From: Salisapilia sapeloensis CBS 127946
Lineage: Eukaryota > Protista > Oomycota
Direction of reading: 5' to 3'
NCBI GenBank assembly: GCA_023334545.1
Contig: JAADVB010000044.1
Span: 33,102-97,101 of the forward strand
Length of the DNA: 64,000 nt
The stretch's first letter is position 1. Each line of letters opens with the position of its first letter. The notes under the pieces were generated by a model. It was not told the origin of the DNA and made no database searches. It saw only the letters and a program-made list of their open reading frames with translations. Made by a program: the position numbers and the translations under genes. This document shows, one piece after another, positions 50,034 through 56,473 of this stretch.

Positions 50034-51031
50034 TACGAAAGTTGGCTTAAAAATAGATGAGTTATGTGGCAGTATTGTCATTTTCGTTTAAATTTATCGA
50101 CTACCGGGTATTCTAAGCGAAAACGAAAGAGCACTGGCATCCATACTGGTCTCCAGTATGTGCTCTACAATATATGGGTGTAGACGGCTACGCATATCTG
50201 CAGCACATGTGCTGCATAGCTTTCCGTCCACATGAATCCCTGCAATATCGCCGACATCCACTTTTTCGTATGTATATCTCCAATCGTCCCGTTTTAGCGC
50301 TCGCGTATCTCCGCTCCGTGCATCTTCTGCTGTTCATTTCGGTCGTCGAAATGTCCATTGTTAGCTGCCTTCGTATGTCGACTCCTTCAGGTTGCTTTGC
50401 CAGATTTGTTAAATGCAAGACATTTCAGTCATAATTTGAGCTCCCTCTGGTTGACCGGCACACGTTAGTGAAGAAGTGACCTCCAGGATGACCCGGCTTC
50501 CCTGGAGGTCTTGTAAATTGAGCGTGGGTTGCTTCTGTTCGGTTGCGCGCTGTGGGGATCGGAGAATGGGCAGTTTTGTTCAAGGCTTGAAAGTAAGAGC
50601 GGATGTGACATCAAGCTCAAAAGGTAGCCGAAAGGTCCGAGATGACTACGGCGGATATATGTAGCTAGAGAAGATGAGATAGGAAACAAGTAAGAATTGG
50701 CACTGTCGAACGCGAAAAGTCTTTAAACTGCAGTCAATTCACTCCTCCATCCATTGCCCTTCAAAATATGCTGTGAATCCGATAAGGTTCTCTTACTGCT
50801 ATCGTTCCGAGAGCTGCTCCGCAAAGTCCTCTTCGTATTCGATTTCTCGGTAATTCATTTTTGGCAGTCTAAAATATACATTTAAGAGGTCTGGCAATTT
50901 AAGTCTGGCGATTCAATGAACCGTTATAGGAAAGTTGGAGGTGAACCGTTATCTCATTTCTTGTCAAAAATGGCTACTTGTCAAGTCATCAATGTCATTA
51001 CATTTGTATGTCTTCTAAGACAAATGTAAAC

Positions 51032-51090
51032 GTTGAAGGTTTAAGGTCTAAAGTTGAAGGTTTAAGGCCTAAAGTGTAAGGTTTAGAGGT
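51032..51090 (+). repeat. 21-bp tandem repeat, about 2.8 copies
   Basis: GTTGAAGGTTTAAGGTCTAAA / GTTGAAGGTTTAAGGCCTAAA / GTGTAAGGTTTAGAGGT. Confidence 0.85.
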
Positions 51091-51124
51091 ATTCGAAGAC
51101 CACGAAAACCGCAGTCCGTCGAAA

Positions 51125-53127
51125 ATGGAGAGCAGAGCACCCAAGCGCAGGCATGGTGACAGCTCCGAGGACACTGTTACGGTCATGGGAGAAGAGGAGA
51201 TGAAGCCAATGGACGTGTCTCCTGAAGACGATCCGCATCAGAACGAAAGGGGTGATCTCGACTCTCCGTCCGGTAGCCTCAAACGCAAGCACGAGCAGGA
51301 CTCGGATGAAGGTGATGATACTGAGACAGAGGCGGAGGCCATGGCAGCATCATTGGAAGCAGCGCAGGATGCCAATATGAACAATGTAGCGAATGTAGAT
51401 GGCACTCCTCTCGTCACTTGTCCGCCACTAGACCAGCGATTTGATTCGTGGGAAGACTTCCATCGTGCCATGGGCGCCTACTTGACGGCGACGCATCAGC
51501 CCATGCGTCTACGGACCTCCGACTCTGCTCGTGCAGTCAACTCTCGTGCTGCAAAGCGTAATAGTACTAAAGTACCGATCGATGAAAGCGTCGGGTTTGT
51601 CAAAAAGCTCTACTTGTGTACGCATGGCGTCAAGACGAAGCCTCGTGGTAAAGGCAAACGACCTCGTCAGCACTATCGATACCGTGGTTGTCCAGCAATG
51701 ATTCGTGCGAGTATCTCGGAACGCAAGGCAGATGAAGGTCCAGGTAAAAGCAAGTACGTCGTCCGTGTCGTGGCACAGATCAATAAGCACAACCACAACT
51801 TGAGCGAGCACTTGTTTAAGTCGTATGCGGACAACCGCGTCGTGATTGATGAAGAGCTAGGTACCCAAGGCAATCCGTACCCACCGCCAGAGTCGTCCAT
51901 GTCTGCCCATCCGCATCTAGGCCCGAGTATGTCATCTGCCATGGACCACATGCCACCAGGCGTGAACTCTGGACTAGATGACCAGCCATTCCGTGCCACT
52001 CGTACGTCTTACCGATCTATTTAACCAAATACTATAGCTAAGTTGTTTTGTCTCAACAGCGCTCGTGCAGCCGACGCAAGACGAGTTAGATGCGTCTCGA
52101 ATCAAGCATAAAGTCGGATGGATCGGCACGGGGATCATGGGCAACAGCATGTGTGGACACCTCATCGTAGGGCTTAAGACGTTTCTAGTAAAGACAAGGT
52201 GCTGATGATTGTGTATTAGGATCAAGGGTATGAAGTGACAGTGTACAATCGGACTTTAAGCAAGTGTGAACACTTGCGAAGTAAAGGAGCAGTCGTAGTC
52301 GACTCTCCAGCTGCCGTGGCACAGGTATCGGACATTGTCTTTGTCATCGTCGGTTATCCGAGTGATGTCCGGACGGTCGTACTCGATCCACACACAGGTG
52401 CGCTTCCGTTTATGAAGAAGGACAGCATCCTTGTGGACATGACGACGAGCGAGCCTTCTCTCGCAAAGGAGATTGACTCTGCTGCTCGATCTCGAGGCGT
52501 GAAAGCACTTGATGCACCTGTGTCTGGTGGAGACGTCGGCGCTCGACAAGGTACGCTGTCCATCATGATCGGAGGAGACGTCACGGCCGTGTACGAGACG
52601 ATGCCACTCTTCAGTCTCATGGGGAAGAACATTCGGCATCAAGGACCTGCCGGTGCCGGGCAGCACACGAAGATGGTGAACCAGATTTTGATCGCGACCA
52701 ACATGATTGGTGTCGTGGAAGGACTGTTGTATGCGAAGCGTAGTGGGTTGGACATGAACGAAACGATTGCGTGTGTGAGTGCTGGCGCCGCCGGTTCGTG
52801 GTCCATTAGCAATCTCGGCCCTCGGATCGCCAAGCGAGACTTTAACCCTGGTTTCATCGTCGAGCACTTTATCAAGGACATGGGCATCGCTTTAACTGAG
52901 GCAGAGCGGATGAAATTATCCTTACCAGGTCTAGCGCTCGCGAAGCAGTTGTATGTAGCGTTGCAAGCACAAGGTCAAGGGCGTATGGGTACGCAAGCTC
53001 TGATGTTAGCGTTGGAACAACTGAATGGTATGTCCATGAGATGTGGTGTTGATGACATGATGTTGATGATCTAGTAGGTATGTCAACGGTGGATGCACGA
53101 AGCAATTTGGATTTGGTAGATTTGTGA
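51125..53127 (+). CDS. Predicted fusion: MULE-type (WRKY/GCM1, ZSWIM3-N-like) zinc DNA-binding domain + beta-hydroxyacid dehydrogenase (3-hydroxyisobutyrate/6PGD-like), 613 aa
   Basis: Exons 51125-52001, 52060-52166, 52220-53027, 53078-53127 keep frame; DBD FDSWEDF..LCTHG..GCPA..HNH; enzyme VGWIGTGIMG, DAPVSGG, GQHTKMVNQ. Both domains are secure; the fusion depends on intron 52002-52059. Confidence 0.8.
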
Positions 53128-53193
53128 AGAGAGAGACAAGAATGCTTTTTTTCACAATCCACTTTTTGTTTCCTTGTCAAGTATAAATGTGGT

Positions 53194-53817
53194 TTAAAGG
53201 TCTGGCAAATCTTCCATCGGGGCACTGCTGACGGTTCGAGTGGTAAAGTAGACGAACGCTTGGAGCGTCGCGACGAGGACGTTGTAGAGGACGATGAACT
53301 TGGTCCAGCCTGCGTACGGGTACGTTTGACAGCACAGCACGGCAAAGAAGAGGATCGTAGCTGCTCGCCCGAGGTAGTTACCGAGGAATGGGAAGTATGC
53401 TTCGATACTGACGCCGTAGACGATGCTCTTGAGGTCGAACATGACGACGACGGCACCAAAGGCCATCGTGTAGAGTCCTAATAGCACCGAAGCGAGCGAG
53501 TAGTGGATGAGCATGGCAAAGCCCTGGATGACCGTAAGAGCAGCGGAGAGGGTATAGAGTCCACCAAAGACTACATCGATCGTAGACGGGTTATCGCCAC
53601 TATCGTTCGTGTCATTTCGAACATGGCCACTCCAGCCGTCGTCCGGATGATTGTATCGAACGTTCGCATACGGATGGACATTGGGTTTCTTAAAGTCATC
53701 TTGCTTCTCCTGTTTCTCTTCCTCTTCACCATCGAGGGATCTACGCTCCTGATCATGCCCATGCTCCTCCTCGCTGCTCACGAGAGGCTGCTTAAGCTCT
53801 TCCTCCGACGCGTCCAT
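53194..53817 (-). CDS. COPI-associated / Tvp15-like Golgi membrane protein
   Basis: Four TM segments with LGLYTMAFGAVVVMFD and YFPFLGNYLGRAATILF; acidic N-terminus from MDASEEE. Confidence 0.75.
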   Translation of the reverse strand: MDASEEELKQPLVSSEEEHGHDQERRSLDGEEEEKQEKQDDFKKPNVHPYANVRYNHPDDGWSGHVRNDTNDSGDNPSTIDVVFGGLYTLSAALTVIQGFAMLIHYSLASVLLGLYTMAFGAVVVMFDLKSIVYGVSIEAYFPFLGNYLGRAATILFFAVLCCQTYPYAGWTKFIVLYNVLVATLQAFVYFTTRTVSSAPMEDLPDL

Positions 53818-53971
53818 TTCTGATTCTTCCAAAATAACTCGTGTGAAGTGGTGGTAAGGACGTCTGAAGTGGCGATAGACACCTAATAGCAGAGGGAGAA
53901 CAGCTACACGTTCCGACCGCTTAGTACGTGCCAAGAATTGACTGAAAGACTTTAATAGTGTACGTTTAGAC

Positions 53972-56473
53972 GTGATGGGATGCTGTCGAGGCGTGAATGT
54001 CCAGCTATTGCTGCTGGTTGCATGTGCCATGGTCGACTATGCGTCGCATACAGTCATGCTCATCCTCGCGCCGCAAATCGCTCTACACTTTTATCCGACC
54101 ACATCGTACGCTCGAGTCGGATTCTATACGGCCTTGTTGTCCGGAGCTGGATTTCTCGGTCATGCATTTAGCTGTCGACCCTGGATCCAGATCGCCAAGT
54201 CCGTACGTAGTGCACAAGGCGTTATTCTATGGGGTCTCGCCGTCCTCGGCGTTGGCTTCTTGAGTCTACTCTTTTGCCAGAGCCTTCTCGCCATGACACT
54301 CGTGCGGTTTGCTACTGGTCTCTTTAGTGGTGTGCTGCCTGTTGCATTAATCGAGATTGACTCTATCTGTGGCAATCGACAGTCCCACTTGGCAGCTTGT
54401 AGCAAGTACATTGGCATTCTCTTCGCTGCGTCCATGACGTACTCTTTGATCTCTCTCACAGGCAAATTGACACCACCCGAGTCCGTACAGCAAGATACCT
54501 CGACGTCCGGATCGACTGCTCATGTAGCTTTTAGTGATGCATCTCTGTACTTTTATCCGCTTTGCTTTGTCTCGATGTTTGCATGGGTCGCTGTCGTCTT
54601 CGTAGTCCTGTCCATGGGCTTTCAACGTGGTCCATCCAACTACGTCCACCTTCATGGTGAAGATGGAGATAGCGACACTGCCGAGGAGGATAGTATCACT
54701 TCTAAAACAACCTCCGTGGACAATGAGCATGCGACGAAAGAAGCACCAACGAGACCTTTAGATCGAGTGAAGACGGCTATAAACGACACATTCCGTCGGA
54801 CATTGCGTGCGGCTGGAGCAAAGCCTGTGATATGGGAACCTCAGCCACACTTTCGAGCGATTCGTGCCATCATACCGCACTACTTGCACGGTTACACGGA
54901 CGATGGGCATGTGATCGTATGGGAGTTCCTAGGTCAGATTCATATGGACAAGCTAGCAAACTCTGGCTTCACGACTGTCGATTTGCGTGACCACTATCGT
55001 TTTCTCTTACAATTCGCGGTCGAAAGACTACTCAAGTCGAACTCGCAGAAGATTGTATACGTTGTCGATTTAGACGGATTGACACTCATGGATGCAGATG
55101 ATCGTGTAGTGGAAAGTGCCATCTCCGTGGCACAAGACTTGCTTGTCAAGTTCCCGGATAAACTATTGAAACTAGTGATTCTGAACAAACCTGTCTGGTT
55201 CTCCCAAGTCATGACACGCGTGCGTCCACATCTACCGAAGAAGACGGCGAATAAGATCACGTTTGTTTCCAAGAAGAATATGTCGAGTGAGCTATTGGAA
55301 CTTATCGGAGCAGATAGTCTACCACGGGGTTATGGTGGATCGAATGGCGTCGAGATGGGTAAGAGCAGTCAAGAGCGGATGTTGGATGAGTTGTTGCGTG
55401 AAACCACTGGATCTCTAGAAGAGACAGTGGAGCTCGTGAGTACGCGTCATCGCGCAGGTAGTCTATCACGCGGTACGGACGACGAGAGTGACGAAGAAGC
55501 TTTCTTCGACTCGCTTGAGTTTGGTCTTCCGGATGATGAAGAGGAAGAAGACATCAGTGGAAAGGTCACGTCTCCTGTGGAAGAAACCGCTGTCATCCAC
55601 TCGCAGACTGCCACGGAGACTTCTCCTGTGTCGCGTAAGAAGTGTCTTTCGAAGACATCTCCGAAGCGTGGTCGCAAGGCACCTGCTCCGTCTCGCAACG
55701 GATATCAGCATGTGATCAATGTCGATCCTCTTGTGGCGGATCTAGAGTCTGCTCATGACATTGCGATTACTAGTGAACCACATGCGTGCCTTATTCTTGG
55801 CGTCTATTTCCTATGGGCACTGCTGCAAATGTGCTTTGACGAGATTCTACCGCTGTGGTTCTTTAAACGCAGCACTGTTGTCGAATCTGCTCCGTTACCT
55901 CTTGCATCTTTGCCTCATTCCGACTCACCGTCTGTGTCGGCTATTACGCTGACAGTGGCGGAGAGTATGGCACTGATGGCACTTGGTGTATTGGTAGCTC
56001 AGCTTTGTTCATGTGCCTTTTCATCAAGCGTCATGACACCCCTCGCAACACTTCGACTCGGATTACTGATCCAAATCCCCATCATTGGCTGTTTTCCTCT
56101 CATCAAGCTCCTTCATGCAGATGAGCTATCCTTTGCATGGGCAATCGTCCTCGTCGTGTTGATTATAAAAAACATGGCGGAAGGCATTTCACTGCATGGT
56201 CTCCTGGCGTTACTCGACAACTCGATTCCAGTGGATCGACGCATCGCAGTTAATCGAGCAGTCCAATTGGTTTCGTACGTGGCACAATTTGTAGCTGGAA
56301 GTGGTGGTCCGCTCGTATTCGCTTTACTCGGGTACTTTGACCGGGAATTTCCATTGGATCAGAGTCTGTTATACTTTCTCCAAGCACTTGGTCTCATCCT
56401 GCTCTTCCTCTTTTCGTTCTTAATTCCAAGTCGACTTAACTTTCCAATGCTCTTTGCCATGGGGAAAAGATAA
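53972..56473 (+). CDS. MFS transporter (ZIFL1-like) with CRAL-TRIO/Sec14 domain inserted in the central loop
   Basis: Single 833-aa ORF: 6 TM (RVGFYTALL..VRFATGLF), CRAL-TRIO (HYLHGYTDDG..VVDLDGL..FPDKLLKLVILNKP..LPRGYGG), acidic FFAT-like motif, then a second 6-TM bundle (DEILPLW..GPLVFA). Confidence 0.88.
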   Translation: MMGCCRGVNVQLLLLVACAMVDYASHTVMLILAPQIALHFYPTTSYARVGFYTALLSGAGFLGHAFSCRPWIQIAKSVRSAQGVILWGLAVLGVGFLSLLFCQSLLAMTLVRFATGLFSGVLPVALIEIDSICGNRQSHLAACSKYIGILFAASMTYSLISLTGKLTPPESVQQDTSTSGSTAHVAFSDASLYFYPLCFVSMFAWVAVVFVVLSMGFQRGPSNYVHLHGEDGDSDTAEEDSITSKTTSVDNEHATKEAPTRPLDRVKTAINDTFRRTLRAAGAKPVIWEPQPHFRAIRAIIPHYLHGYTDDGHVIVWEFLGQIHMDKLANSGFTTVDLRDHYRFLLQFAVERLLKSNSQKIVYVVDLDGLTLMDADDRVVESAISVAQDLLVKFPDKLLKLVILNKPVWFSQVMTRVRPHLPKKTANKITFVSKKNMSSELLELIGADSLPRGYGGSNGVEMGKSSQERMLDELLRETTGSLEETVELVSTRHRAGSLSRGTDDESDEEAFFDSLEFGLPDDEEEEDISGKVTSPVEETAVIHSQTATETSPVSRKKCLSKTSPKRGRKAPAPSRNGYQHVINVDPLVADLESAHDIAITSEPHACLILGVYFLWALLQMCFDEILPLWFFKRSTVVESAPLPLASLPHSDSPSVSAITLTVAESMALMALGVLVAQLCSCAFSSSVMTPLATLRLGLLIQIPIIGCFPLIKLLHADELSFAWAIVLVVLIIKNMAEGISLHGLLALLDNSIPVDRRIAVNRAVQLVSYVAQFVAGSGGPLVFALLGYFDREFPLDQSLLYFLQALGLILLFLFSFLIPSRLNFPMLFAMGKR

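What the first reader, a model, noticed from the sequence alone, without database searches (positions are those of the whole stretch)
51125..53127. Transposase-derived DNA-binding domain fused by splicing to an intact beta-hydroxyacid dehydrogenase: candidate metabolite- or redox-sensing transcription factor
Seen: the dehydrogenase exon has no in-frame ATG before its Rossmann motif (in-frame TAG at 52035-52037; the first Met is inside GIMG), so it needs an upstream exon. A consensus GTACGT donor at 52002 and a CAG acceptor at 52059 (58-nt intron, typical here) join it in frame to the 292-codon upstream ORF, giving 613 aa. That ORF carries a C..C..HxH WRKY/GCM1-fold domain (about 51440-51830) like those of oomycete MULE transposases, with no DDE or SWIM domain, plus basic KRK stretches. 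The enzyme keeps GxGxxG, DAPVSGG and the catalytic Lys (TKMVNQ). Known analogy: NPAC/GLYR1 couples a chromatin-binding module to a beta-hydroxyacid dehydrogenase fold. Inference: a domesticated-transposon regulator whose tetramer-forming dehydrogenase senses NAD(P)H or a hydroxyacid, or makes a metabolite at chromatin. In-frame Mets near 51887-51950 could yield an enzyme-only isoform.
Basis: partly seen in the sequence, partly recalled or inferred. Interest (0 to 1): 0.85.

Follow-up and report, generated by a model that had tools for sequence, protein, structure and literature searches.

The report
Zinc-finger DNA-binding domain fused to dehydrogenase
One oomycete gene, confirmed by spliced RNA and conserved from Albugo to Phytophthora, joins a transposon-type zinc-finger DNA-binding domain to an apparently active NADP-type hydroxyacid dehydrogenase; no paper describing this pairing was found, and it may link metabolism to gene control.

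Summary
RNA contigs from four runs (two related organisms) skip exactly 52002-52059, 52167-52219 and 53027-53076. This joins the 292-codon upstream ORF in frame to the dehydrogenase, giving a 613-aa protein; no contig retaining the intron was laid.

The gene is not a quirk of this genome. About 25 annotated proteins of 596-655 aa with the same architecture exist in Phytophthora, downy mildews, Pythium, Globisporangium, Lagenidium and Albugo. Saprolegniales showed only ~300-aa stand-alone enzymes. Gene order and the junction intron position are conserved in P. infestans and P. oligandrum.

Residues 97-245 are nearly invariant across orthologues, more so than the enzyme. An AlphaFold model (pLDDT 90.5) matches AFT2-DNA, WRKY, and the FAR1/FHY3/ZSWIM3 DNA-binding domains. 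Relatives of the domain sit in MULE transposases. Every catalytic and NADP-binding motif of the beta-hydroxyacid dehydrogenase is kept in all complete fused orthologues, unlike the catalytically dead NPAC/GLYR1.

DNA binding, nuclear location, enzyme activity and any sensing role are inferred, not shown. A conserved enzyme-only isoform is unlikely, because five orthologues have no Met in the linker.

The fusion is already in databases, named only as a dehydrogenase, and I found no paper describing it. I rate it a new variant of a known kind, of moderate-to-good interest.

The parts
51027..51090 (+). 21-bp x 3 tandem repeat directly abutting the 5' ends of the RNA contigs. It lies in the promoter/5' region and its role is unknown.
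   Evidence: TRF. Contig starts at 51088-51102. No similar repeat lies upstream of the P. infestans or P. oligandrum orthologues.
51088..51124 (+). 5' UTR, as far as the contigs reach
   Evidence: RNA contigs begin at 51088 (X3), 51091 (X1), 51102 (X6) and 51130 (X5).
51125..52001 (+). Coding exon 1: 292 codons plus 1 nt, ending in phase 1
   Evidence: 22 synonymous and 3 non-synonymous differences from organism B.
51125..51412 (+). Residues 1-96: poorly conserved basic-then-acidic low-complexity N-terminus (PKRRH, KRKH, D/E runs). Possible NLS plus acidic region; this is inferred.
   Evidence: Alignment A1: only scattered conservation. Orthologue BLAST alignments start at residues 83-97 for all but one orthologue (54).
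51413..51859 (+). Residues 97-245: FAR1/ZSWIM3_N-type WRKY-GCM1 zinc-finger domain. Candidate Zn ligands are C165 (51617-51619), C189, H222 and H224. A basic loop KTKPRGKGKRPRQHYRYR lies between the two Cys.
   Evidence: About 100 invariant columns in 26 orthologues. Family-wide C-T-H...C...H-N-H. AF2 pLDDT 90.5. AFT2-DNA 4lmg Z 7.7 and WRKY1 Z 5.3. FRS10/FRS6/FHY3/FAR1/ZSWIM3. Pfam matches are sub-threshold: ZSWIM3_N 2.8e-5, DBD_Tnp_Mut 0.007, FAR1 0.014.
51860..52001 (+). Residues 246-292: first part of the 69-aa linker, Pro/Ser-rich, with a conserved L-[ED]-D..L/F-K/R-T/S motif at the exon end
52002..52059 (+). Intron 1, 58 nt, GTACGT...CAG. It contains the TAA (52022-52024) that would end an unspliced product and an in-frame TAG (52035-52037) that blocks an upstream start for the dehydrogenase.
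   Evidence: The joint 52001>52060 was seen in X1, X3, X5 and X6. The intron position is conserved in L001 and L002.
52060..52166 (+). Exon 2: the end of the linker (PLVQPTQDELDASRIKHKV, corresponding to the conserved P-L-F-Q-x-Q-x-L-D-L-M..SR.K.RV) and the start of the Rossmann fold (GWIGTGIMG)
52167..52219 (+). Intron 2, 53 nt, GT..AG
   Evidence: Joint 52166>52220 in all four runs.
52220..53026 (+). Exon 3: the bulk of the beta-hydroxyacid dehydrogenase (NAD_binding_2 plus NAD_binding_11). It carries N338-R339-T340..K343, S405, D426-APVSGG, catalytic K479 and K547-D548.
   Evidence: Pfam 8.5e-39 and 1.9e-36. Motifs. PDB relatives 3w6u 4.9e-55 and tartronate semialdehyde reductases.
53027..53076 (+). 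Intron 3, 50 nt. The cut can be read one base to the right: GT..AG at 53028-53077.
   Evidence: Joint 53026>53077 in X1 and X3.
53077..53127 (+). Exon 4 coding part: the C-terminal 16 residues and the TGA stop at 53125-53127

Best explanation
This is one conserved gene for a 613-aa two-module protein. The N-terminal half has a variable basic/acidic leader, followed by a FAR1/ZSWIM3_N-type WRKY-GCM1 zinc finger of the kind that MULE transposases use to bind DNA. Here it stands without any transposase catalytic domain. A 65-79-aa flexible linker connects it to a complete beta-hydroxyacid dehydrogenase that keeps every catalytic and NADP(H)-binding motif.

Shown: the fused spliced mRNA; purifying selection on both halves; the fold of the N-terminal domain; and conservation of the architecture, neighbouring genes and junction intron across peronosporalean oomycetes and Albugo.

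Inferred: the zinc finger binds specific DNA in the nucleus. The dehydrogenase half, which forms dimers or tetramers in its family, makes the protein multivalent on DNA and remains an enzyme. Occupancy of its NADP(H)/hydroxyacid site, or its catalysis, would then be coupled to transcriptional control. This resembles bacterial PutA, or animal CtBP and NPAC/GLYR1, but with a live active site.

My estimates: a real single fused protein about 0.9; the N-terminal domain binds nucleic acid about 0.65; binding or output is coupled to metabolite or cofactor about 0.35.
For: Fused transcript: RNA contigs from X1/X3 (identical to the window) and X5/X6 (about 97% identical relative) all carry the 52001>52060 joint and run from about 51090 through the dehydrogenase. 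No intron-containing contig was laid. The 0.87 word share fits a fully spliced transcript.

Selection: 35 of 40 listed differences are synonymous, and the non-synonymous ones lie outside the zinc-finger domain.

Conservation: about 25 fused proteins in more than 10 genera. The SET-SUN-fused gene-COPI_assoc-CRAL_TRIO neighbourhood is the same in P. infestans and P. oligandrum. The junction intron position is the same.

Domain: residues 97-245 are nearly invariant. The AF2 model has pLDDT 90.5. The best solved match is AFT2 bound to DNA, followed by WRKY domains. The best AFDB matches are the DNA-binding N-termini of FRS10, FRS6, FHY3, FAR1, ZSWIM3 and ZSWIM9. Relatives P0230, P0239 and P0243 carry the same domain in front of a MULE transposase core. 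Phytophthora MULEs with FAR1 domains are published (PMC6446971).

Enzyme: GxGxMG, NRTxxK (N replaced by S in Lagenidium), DMTTS (final S replaced by N in Albugo), DAPVSGG, GxGQHTKxxNQ and KD are kept in the 20 complete fused orthologues aligned (a 21st, Peronosclerospora, is a partial model).
Against: There are no data on protein level, localisation, DNA binding or enzyme activity. The window's own domain falls just below Pfam gathering scores (25 vs 27.8 bits for ZSWIM3_N). WRKY-GCM1 folds can in principle serve other purposes. Contigs cannot exclude minor unspliced or internally initiated isoforms (caveats). In Pythium, Albugo and this window no stand-alone paralogue was seen next to the gene, so the fused protein may simply be the cell's copy of this metabolic enzyme. 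AF2 could not be run on the full-length protein, so nothing is known about contacts between the two modules.
Confidence: 0.65

Rival explanations
1. It is essentially a metabolic enzyme. The FAR1-like module is a non-DNA appendage (for example a protein-protein, RNA or localisation/tethering module, or a regulator of the enzyme) and the protein has no role in transcription.
For: All catalytic motifs are intact in every complete fused orthologue. Branch lengths in the fused clade are similar to those of stand-alone enzymes. In P. oligandrum and in this window there is no adjacent stand-alone copy, so the fused gene may supply the enzyme activity. Databases name it only as a dehydrogenase.
Against: The N-terminal domain is more conserved than the enzyme, with about 100 invariant columns. 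Its nearest structural relatives are all DNA-binding domains, and the best solved match is a DNA complex. It carries a strongly basic invariant loop and a basic/acidic leader typical of nuclear factors.
Confidence: 0.2
2. It works like NPAC/GLYR1: a DNA- or chromatin-bound factor in which the dehydrogenase fold serves only as an oligomerisation and cofactor-binding scaffold, and catalysis is irrelevant.
For: NPAC is a precedent. It has a PWWP chromatin reader plus a beta-hydroxyacid dehydrogenase fold that tetramerises and binds NAD(P)H but is inert (PMC6004073; PMC13144531). NPAC's dehydrogenase domain is a detectable homologue (2uyy, 5.9e-25).
Against: NPAC lost the catalytic Lys (replaced by Met437). 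Here K479, N483, S405 (Asn in Albugo only) and the whole substrate pocket signature are retained across all complete fused orthologues over a deep divergence. That is hard to explain without selection for catalysis.
Confidence: 0.12
3. There are two separate functional products. One is a FAR1-only protein from intron-1-retaining mRNA, ending at TAA 52022-52024. The other is a dehydrogenase-only protein from an internal promoter and internal Met. The fused form would be a minor by-product.
For: The window has four in-frame Mets in the linker (M259, 269, 273, 276). An unspliced message would give a 299-aa protein. Contigs merge overlapping transcripts and drop rare variants (caveats).
Against: No contig carrying intron 1 was laid in any of four runs, although contig depth reached 140-189 in two of them (9-12 in the other two). 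Contigs begin just upstream of the first ATG. Five orthologues have no Met in the linker. The exon-2 segment before the Rossmann fold is conserved yet is preceded by an in-frame stop in the intron.
Confidence: 0.06

Closest known systems
FHY3/FAR1/FRS plant transcription factors and animal ZSWIM3/ZSWIM9 (domesticated MULE transposases)
   Same: They share the N-terminal WRKY-GCM1-type zinc-finger fold (Foldseek probability 1.00, TM by query 0.49-0.57). They share the C...C...HNH ligand pattern and an origin in MULE transposase DNA-binding domains.
   Different: FHY3/FAR1/ZSWIM3 retain the dead MULE core and a SWIM finger. Here both are absent and are replaced by a metabolic enzyme. Sequence identity is only 12-21%.
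NPAC/GLYR1/NDF (PWWP + AT-hook + beta-hydroxyacid dehydrogenase fold)
   Same: A chromatin/DNA-targeting module is joined by a long linker to a C-terminal beta-hydroxyacid dehydrogenase domain.
   Different: The targeting module is different: a zinc finger, not PWWP. NPAC's catalytic Lys is replaced by Met and it has no activity, whereas here all catalytic residues are kept. The fusions are independent, in animals versus oomycetes.
Yeast Aft1/Aft2 iron-responsive activators (WRKY-GCM1 DNA-binding domain; PDB 4lmg)
   Same: AFT2 bound to DNA is the best solved structural match to residues 101-244 (Z 7.7, 87 residues aligned).
   Different: Aft proteins sense Fe-S clusters through a Cys motif and carry no enzyme domain. 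Identity is about 20%.
Stand-alone oomycete, plant and bacterial 'HIBADH-like' beta-hydroxyacid dehydrogenases (closest structure 3w6u; tartronate semialdehyde reductases 1yb4, 1vpd)
   Same: The C-terminal 307 residues are 65-75% identical to stand-alone oomycete and Planctomycetes enzymes and have identical motifs.
   Different: Those are ~300-aa single-domain enzymes. The physiological substrate of this subfamily is not established.
Bacterial PutA (recalled from general knowledge; not tested here)
   Same: It is a DNA-binding domain covalently linked to an active dehydrogenase, so that substrate and redox state switch the protein between repressor and enzyme roles. This is the closest working analogy for the proposed mechanism.
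   Different: The folds are unrelated (ribbon-helix-helix plus proline/P5C dehydrogenases) and it is bacterial. This is an analogy only.

Membership tests
beta-hydroxyacid dehydrogenase family (HIBADH/6PGDH-related; Pfam NAD_binding_2 + NAD_binding_11) | Both Pfam domains score above their gathering scores | tested here: met
   PF03446 133.6 bits (cut-off 21) and PF14833 125.4 bits (cut-off 30).
beta-hydroxyacid dehydrogenase family (HIBADH/6PGDH-related; Pfam NAD_binding_2 + NAD_binding_11) | N-terminal dinucleotide-binding GxGxxG, plus the NRTxxK signature. I recall this signature as typical of NADP-preferring members; that is knowledge, not a test. | tested here: met
   G315-T-G-I-M-G320 and N338-R-T-L-S-K343 are conserved in the fused orthologues (N replaced by S in Lagenidium).
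beta-hydroxyacid dehydrogenase family (HIBADH/6PGDH-related; Pfam NAD_binding_2 + NAD_binding_11) | Catalytic Lys in GxGxxxKxxNQ, the substrate Ser (DMTTS), DAPVSGG and the KD motif | tested here: met
   K479, N483, S405, D426-G432 and K547-D548 are kept in the 20 complete fused orthologues, except S405 replaced by Asn in Albugo.
beta-hydroxyacid dehydrogenase family (HIBADH/6PGDH-related; Pfam NAD_binding_2 + NAD_binding_11) | Measured NAD(P)-dependent oxidation of a beta-hydroxyacid | not testable with these tools
   This needs a recombinant enzyme assay.
WRKY-GCM1 superfamily, FAR1/ZSWIM3_N-type DNA-binding domain | Sequence-profile match to FAR1 (PF03101) or ZSWIM3_N (PF21599) above the curated cut-off | tested here: inconclusive
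   The window protein is sub-threshold: ZSWIM3_N 25.0 vs 27.8 bits and FAR1 16.6 vs 28.1 bits. Many orthologues carry a precomputed PF21599 hit. phmmer relatives P0122, P0124 and P0138 pass both cut-offs.
WRKY-GCM1 superfamily, FAR1/ZSWIM3_N-type DNA-binding domain | The characteristic beta-sheet fold with an N-terminal helix | tested here: met
   AF2 model pLDDT 90.5 and pTM 0.81. Top PDB matches are AFT2-DNA (Z 7.7) and WRKY1 (Z 5.3). The top 18 AFDB Swiss-Prot hits are all FRS/FHY3/FAR1/ZSWIM3/ZSWIM9/AFT2 DNA-binding regions.
WRKY-GCM1 superfamily, FAR1/ZSWIM3_N-type DNA-binding domain | Four zinc ligands in a C...C...H-x-H arrangement | tested here: met
   C165, C189, H222 and H224 are invariant in 26 orthologues and at least 90% conserved in 91 family members. 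Metal binding itself was not tested.
WRKY-GCM1 superfamily, FAR1/ZSWIM3_N-type DNA-binding domain | Sequence-specific DNA binding | not testable with these tools
   This needs EMSA, PBM or DAP-seq.
MULE (Mutator-like) transposase | RNaseH-like DDE transposase core (PF10551 / PF21056) and usually a SWIM finger | tested here: not met
   There is no such hit in residues 1-292, and the rest of the protein is the dehydrogenase. Relatives P0230, P0239 and P0243 do have the core. The protein is therefore transposase-derived at most, not a transposase.
NPAC/GLYR1/NDF | An N-terminal PWWP domain and a catalytically dead dehydrogenase (Lys replaced by Met) | tested here: not met
   There is no PWWP hit and the catalytic Lys is retained. 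NPAC features are from PMC6004073 and PMC13144531. This is an analogue, not a member.

The most novel reading that the evidence does not exclude
The protein is a eukaryotic PutA-like 'enzyme-transcription factor'. In this reading, a sequence-specific FAR1-type zinc finger places an active NADP(H)-dependent hydroxyacid dehydrogenase oligomer on particular promoters. Turnover or binding of a specific hydroxyacid/semialdehyde or of NADPH then switches its DNA binding or its regulatory output. That would give peronosporalean oomycetes, including the major crop pathogens, a direct metabolite-to-transcription switch built from a domesticated transposon domain.
Probability: 0.25. Interest if true: 0.85.

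Novelty: new variant of a known kind. Interest (0 to 1): 0.58.

Why it matters
Domesticated MULE/FAR1 DNA-binding domains are known as transcription factors in plants. Dehydrogenase folds are known as chromatin cofactors in animals (NPAC, CtBP). Here the two ideas meet in one protein whose enzyme half still looks fully active.

The protein has been kept for the whole history of the Albugo-Pythium-Phytophthora lineage, and its DNA-binding-type domain is almost frozen in sequence. Oomycete transcription factors are poorly known. This would be a lineage-specific, single-copy, easily testable candidate that links metabolic state to gene expression in a group that includes major plant pathogens.

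It also corrects public annotation. The gene is named only '3-hydroxyisobutyrate dehydrogenase', sometimes 'mitochondrial', and in several genomes it is split or merged with its neighbours.

Tried and rejected
1. AF2 on the 292-aa N-terminal half with only the 26 near-identical orthologues gave an unusable model (pLDDT 47.5). I replaced it with a 91-sequence family alignment of the domain alone.
2. I looked for an orthologue in which the zinc finger and the dehydrogenase lie in one uninterrupted exon, which would prove the fusion without relying on splicing. P. infestans and P. oligandrum both have the intron at the same place, so no such proof was obtained.
3. I looked for a conserved upstream repeat or motif shared with the orthologues' promoters, as a possible autoregulatory site. 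Nothing of 9 nt or longer was shared.
4. Seven full-text literature searches for the fusion or for the oomycete gene found no description of it. This is absence in the held library only.
5. The chimeric gene-model artefact explanation is rejected, because RNA joints and more than 20 independent annotations agree.
6. The annotation label 'mitochondrial HIBADH-like 1' is not supported by the acidic/basic N-terminus, but localisation was not tested.
7. The order of events (fusion first, then tandem duplication of the dehydrogenase part, or the reverse) could not be settled. The stand-alone Peronosporales clade is sister to the fused clade, and fused-clade monophyly has only 80/80 support.
Full report
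**What is in the sequence.**
- The + strand carries an ATG-initiated ORF at 51125-52024 (299 aa).
- A GTACGT donor lies at 52002 and a CAG acceptor ends at 52059.
- Removing these 58 nt, plus two further short introns (52167-52219 and 53027-53076), gives an 1842-nt CDS encoding 613 aa, with TGA at 53125-53127.
- In the dehydrogenase frame an in-frame TAG sits at 52035-52037.
- The first Met after that TAG is M319, inside the GTGIMG glycine-rich loop. The enzyme exon therefore cannot start on its own without losing its Rossmann motif.

**Transcript evidence.**
- Four public RNA runs hold the stretch. I laid their contigs on 50600-53600.
- Runs X1 and X3 (organism A) are identical to the window. 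X5 and X6 (organism B) are about 97% identical.
- Each of the four gives a contig that starts at 51088-51130, just upstream of or at the first ATG.
- Each carries the joints 52001>52060 and 52166>52220 (GT..AG).
- In X1 and X3 the contig also carries 53026>53077 and continues past the stop.
- No contig containing intron 1 was laid, although contig depths were 140-189 in organism A. The 0.87 word share is what a fully spliced message would give.
- Caveat: contigs merge overlapping transcripts and drop rare forms. Minor isoforms are therefore not excluded, and the continuation into the convergent neighbour shows only overlapping 3' ends.

**Selection.** Forty of the 59 differences between organisms A and B were listed. 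Of these, 35 are synonymous in the spliced frame. In the upstream exon 22 of 25 are synonymous, and the three replacements lie outside residues 97-245. Both halves are coding sequence under purifying selection in one continuous frame.

**Conservation of the architecture.**
- A search with only the upstream 292 aa against 1.8 billion representatives found 325 relatives. Among them was a P. nicotianae model that runs from the zinc-finger region straight into the dehydrogenase (P0139).
- A cluster member of 607 aa (P0273), used as a query, returned about 25 proteins of 596-655 aa. All have the N-terminal domain plus NAD_binding_2 and NAD_binding_11.
- These come from Phytophthora (infestans, ramorum, capsici, cinnamomi, fragariae/rubi, pseudosyringae, kernoviae, cactorum), Peronospora, Hyaloperonospora, Plasmopara, Bremia, Peronosclerospora, Pythium oligandrum and insidiosum, Globisporangium, '[Pythium] brassicae', Lagenidium and Albugo laibachii.
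- The window protein is 60-72% identical to them from about residue 92 to the end. The best match is P. oligandrum.
- Saprolegniales (Saprolegnia, Aphanomyces, Thraustotheca) showed only ~299-aa stand-alone enzymes.
- In P. infestans and P. oligandrum the gene sits in the same neighbourhood as in the window: SET, SUN, the fused gene, COPI_assoc, CRAL_TRIO (and earlier notes).
- In both of those species the junction intron lies at the same point, between the conserved LK(T/S)x motif and the P/A-[LM]-F-Q motif.
- The linker is 65-79 aa everywhere. In five species it contains no Met at all, so a conserved dehydrogenase-only isoform from an internal AUG is unlikely.

**The N-terminal module.**
- Residues 1-96 are variable: a basic cluster followed by acidic runs.
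- Residues 97-245 are extraordinarily conserved, with about 100 invariant columns in 26 sequences. This includes C165, C189, H222, H224 and a basic loop between the two cysteines.
- Pfam gives only sub-threshold hits for the window protein: ZSWIM3_N 2.8e-5, DBD_Tnp_Mut 0.007 and FAR1 0.014.
- The wider family found by phmmer keeps W, N, C-T-H, G, R, R, C and H-N-H. It includes proteins that pass the FAR1 and ZSWIM3_N cut-offs, and others in which the domain precedes a MULE transposase core.
- With the 91-sequence alignment, AlphaFold gave a confident model (pLDDT 90.5, pTM 0.81).
- Its best solved matches are AFT2 bound to DNA (Foldseek E 5e-3, probability 1.00; VIA Z 7.7) and WRKY domains (Z 5.3 and 3.7).
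- Its best Swiss-Prot AlphaFold matches are the DNA-binding N-termini of FRS10, FRS6, ZSWIM3, FHY3, FAR1, ZSWIM9 and AFT2.
- Phytophthora MULEs with FAR1 domains are on record (PMC6446971).
- The module is thus a WRKY-GCM1/FAR1-type domain of the transposase-associated kind, here without any transposase core or SWIM finger.

**The dehydrogenase.**
- It has strong NAD_binding_2 and NAD_binding_11 hits.
- The nearest solved relatives are 3w6u (4.9e-55) and tartronate semialdehyde reductases. NPAC (2uyy) is a more distant relative.
- GxGxMG, NRTxxK (N replaced by S in Lagenidium), DMTTS (final S replaced by N in Albugo), DAPVSGG, GxGQHTKxxNQ and KD are kept in the 20 complete fused orthologues aligned and in the stand-alone enzymes.
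- In a maximum-likelihood tree of the dehydrogenase part, fused proteins and Peronosporales stand-alone proteins form a starred clade (98/95) separate from Saprolegniales (100/99). The fused proteins group together at 80/80, and the stand-alone Peronosporales enzymes (100/99) are their sister.
- In P. infestans the stand-alone copy lies immediately downstream of the fused gene, which points to a tandem duplication. The order of fusion and duplication is not resolved.

**Interpretation.**
- Shown: a single, old, conserved gene joins a FAR1-type zinc finger to an apparently active NADP-type beta-hydroxyacid dehydrogenase.
- Inferred: the zinc finger binds DNA. The grounds are its fold relatives, its invariant basic loop and its extreme conservation.
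- Inferred: the enzyme half oligomerises like its family and remains catalytic, because all catalytic residues are under selection.
- Inferred: the two activities are coupled.
- The closest working analogies are NPAC/GLYR1, whose dehydrogenase is inert because Lys is replaced by Met, and, from general knowledge, bacterial PutA and CtBP.
- The protein is not a member of the NPAC family (no PWWP, live active site) and it is not a transposase.

**Novelty.** The fused protein is already in public databases under dehydrogenase names, often with the ZSWIM3_N hit precomputed. Seven full-text searches found no paper that describes or tests it. I rate it a new variant of a known kind. It is interesting mainly as a testable link between metabolism and transcription in oomycetes, and the function remains unproven.

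**Limits.**
- The tools hold no protein-level evidence.
- The full-length protein could not be modelled.
- Isoform proportions cannot be read from contigs.
- Absence of the fusion in Saprolegniales rests on annotated proteins, not on their DNA.

Noticed in passing
window 51027-51090: A 21-bp unit (TAAAGTTGAAGGTTTAAGGTC) is repeated 3 times and ends exactly where the RNA contigs of the fused gene begin (51088-51102). No counterpart lies upstream of the P. infestans or P. oligandrum orthologues.
   Followed up: partly
window 53194-54030 (- strand) versus L001 7101-7969 and L002 5546-6469: The COPI_assoc/TVP15-like neighbour is convergent to the fused gene in the window. Only 66 nt separate the two stop codons, and RNA contigs run across both genes. 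In P. infestans and P. oligandrum it lies on the same strand as the fused gene, so there is a local inversion in this lineage.
   Followed up: partly
L001 5740-6936 (P. infestans): A stand-alone 300-aa paralogue of the dehydrogenase lies directly downstream of the fused gene. It is absent at that place in P. oligandrum and in the window. Models of 928 aa (P. cactorum) and 941 aa (P. infestans) look like mergers of the two tandem genes.
   Followed up: partly
P0297 (Albugo laibachii, 874 aa), P0284 (Lagenidium, 905 aa), P0398 (Globisporangium splendens, 946 aa): The P0297 and P0284 models carry PF08507 (COPI_assoc) in addition to the dehydrogenase domains, so they are probably merged with the neighbouring gene. 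P0398 is of similar excess length and may be a similar merger, but its domains were not checked. Conversely, several Logan or ENA gene calls (P0121, P0123, P0133) are unspliced fragments of exon 1.
   Followed up: no
P0122, P0124-P0137 (Bremia, Phytophthora and others; 945-2140 aa): Oomycetes encode large proteins with 5-9 tandem copies of the same FAR1-like domain and no other recognised domain. P0138, annotated 'Transcription factor IIB' in P. cinnamomi, has three copies. This is an expanded, uncharacterised family.
   Followed up: partly
P0026, P0065 (Planctomycetes/Pirellulales) versus window 52220-53026: Bacterial dehydrogenases are 67-68% identical to the oomycete enzyme, which is as close as the Saprolegniales orthologues are. 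This suggests an unusually slowly evolving family or horizontal transfer.
   Followed up: no
P0338, P0355 (metagenomic, 458-466 aa): Bacterial proteins combine a response-regulator receiver domain (PF00072) with the same dehydrogenase family. This is another case of this enzyme fold being wired to a signalling module.
   Followed up: no
window residues C120L, M187R, C196S of the fused protein (51482-51484, 51683-51685, 51710-51712): The window's protein departs from three otherwise nearly invariant positions of the zinc-finger domain, two of them Cys. It also has a long terminal branch in the dehydrogenase tree (0.32 versus a median of 0.07). This lineage is evolving faster than its relatives.
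   Followed up: no
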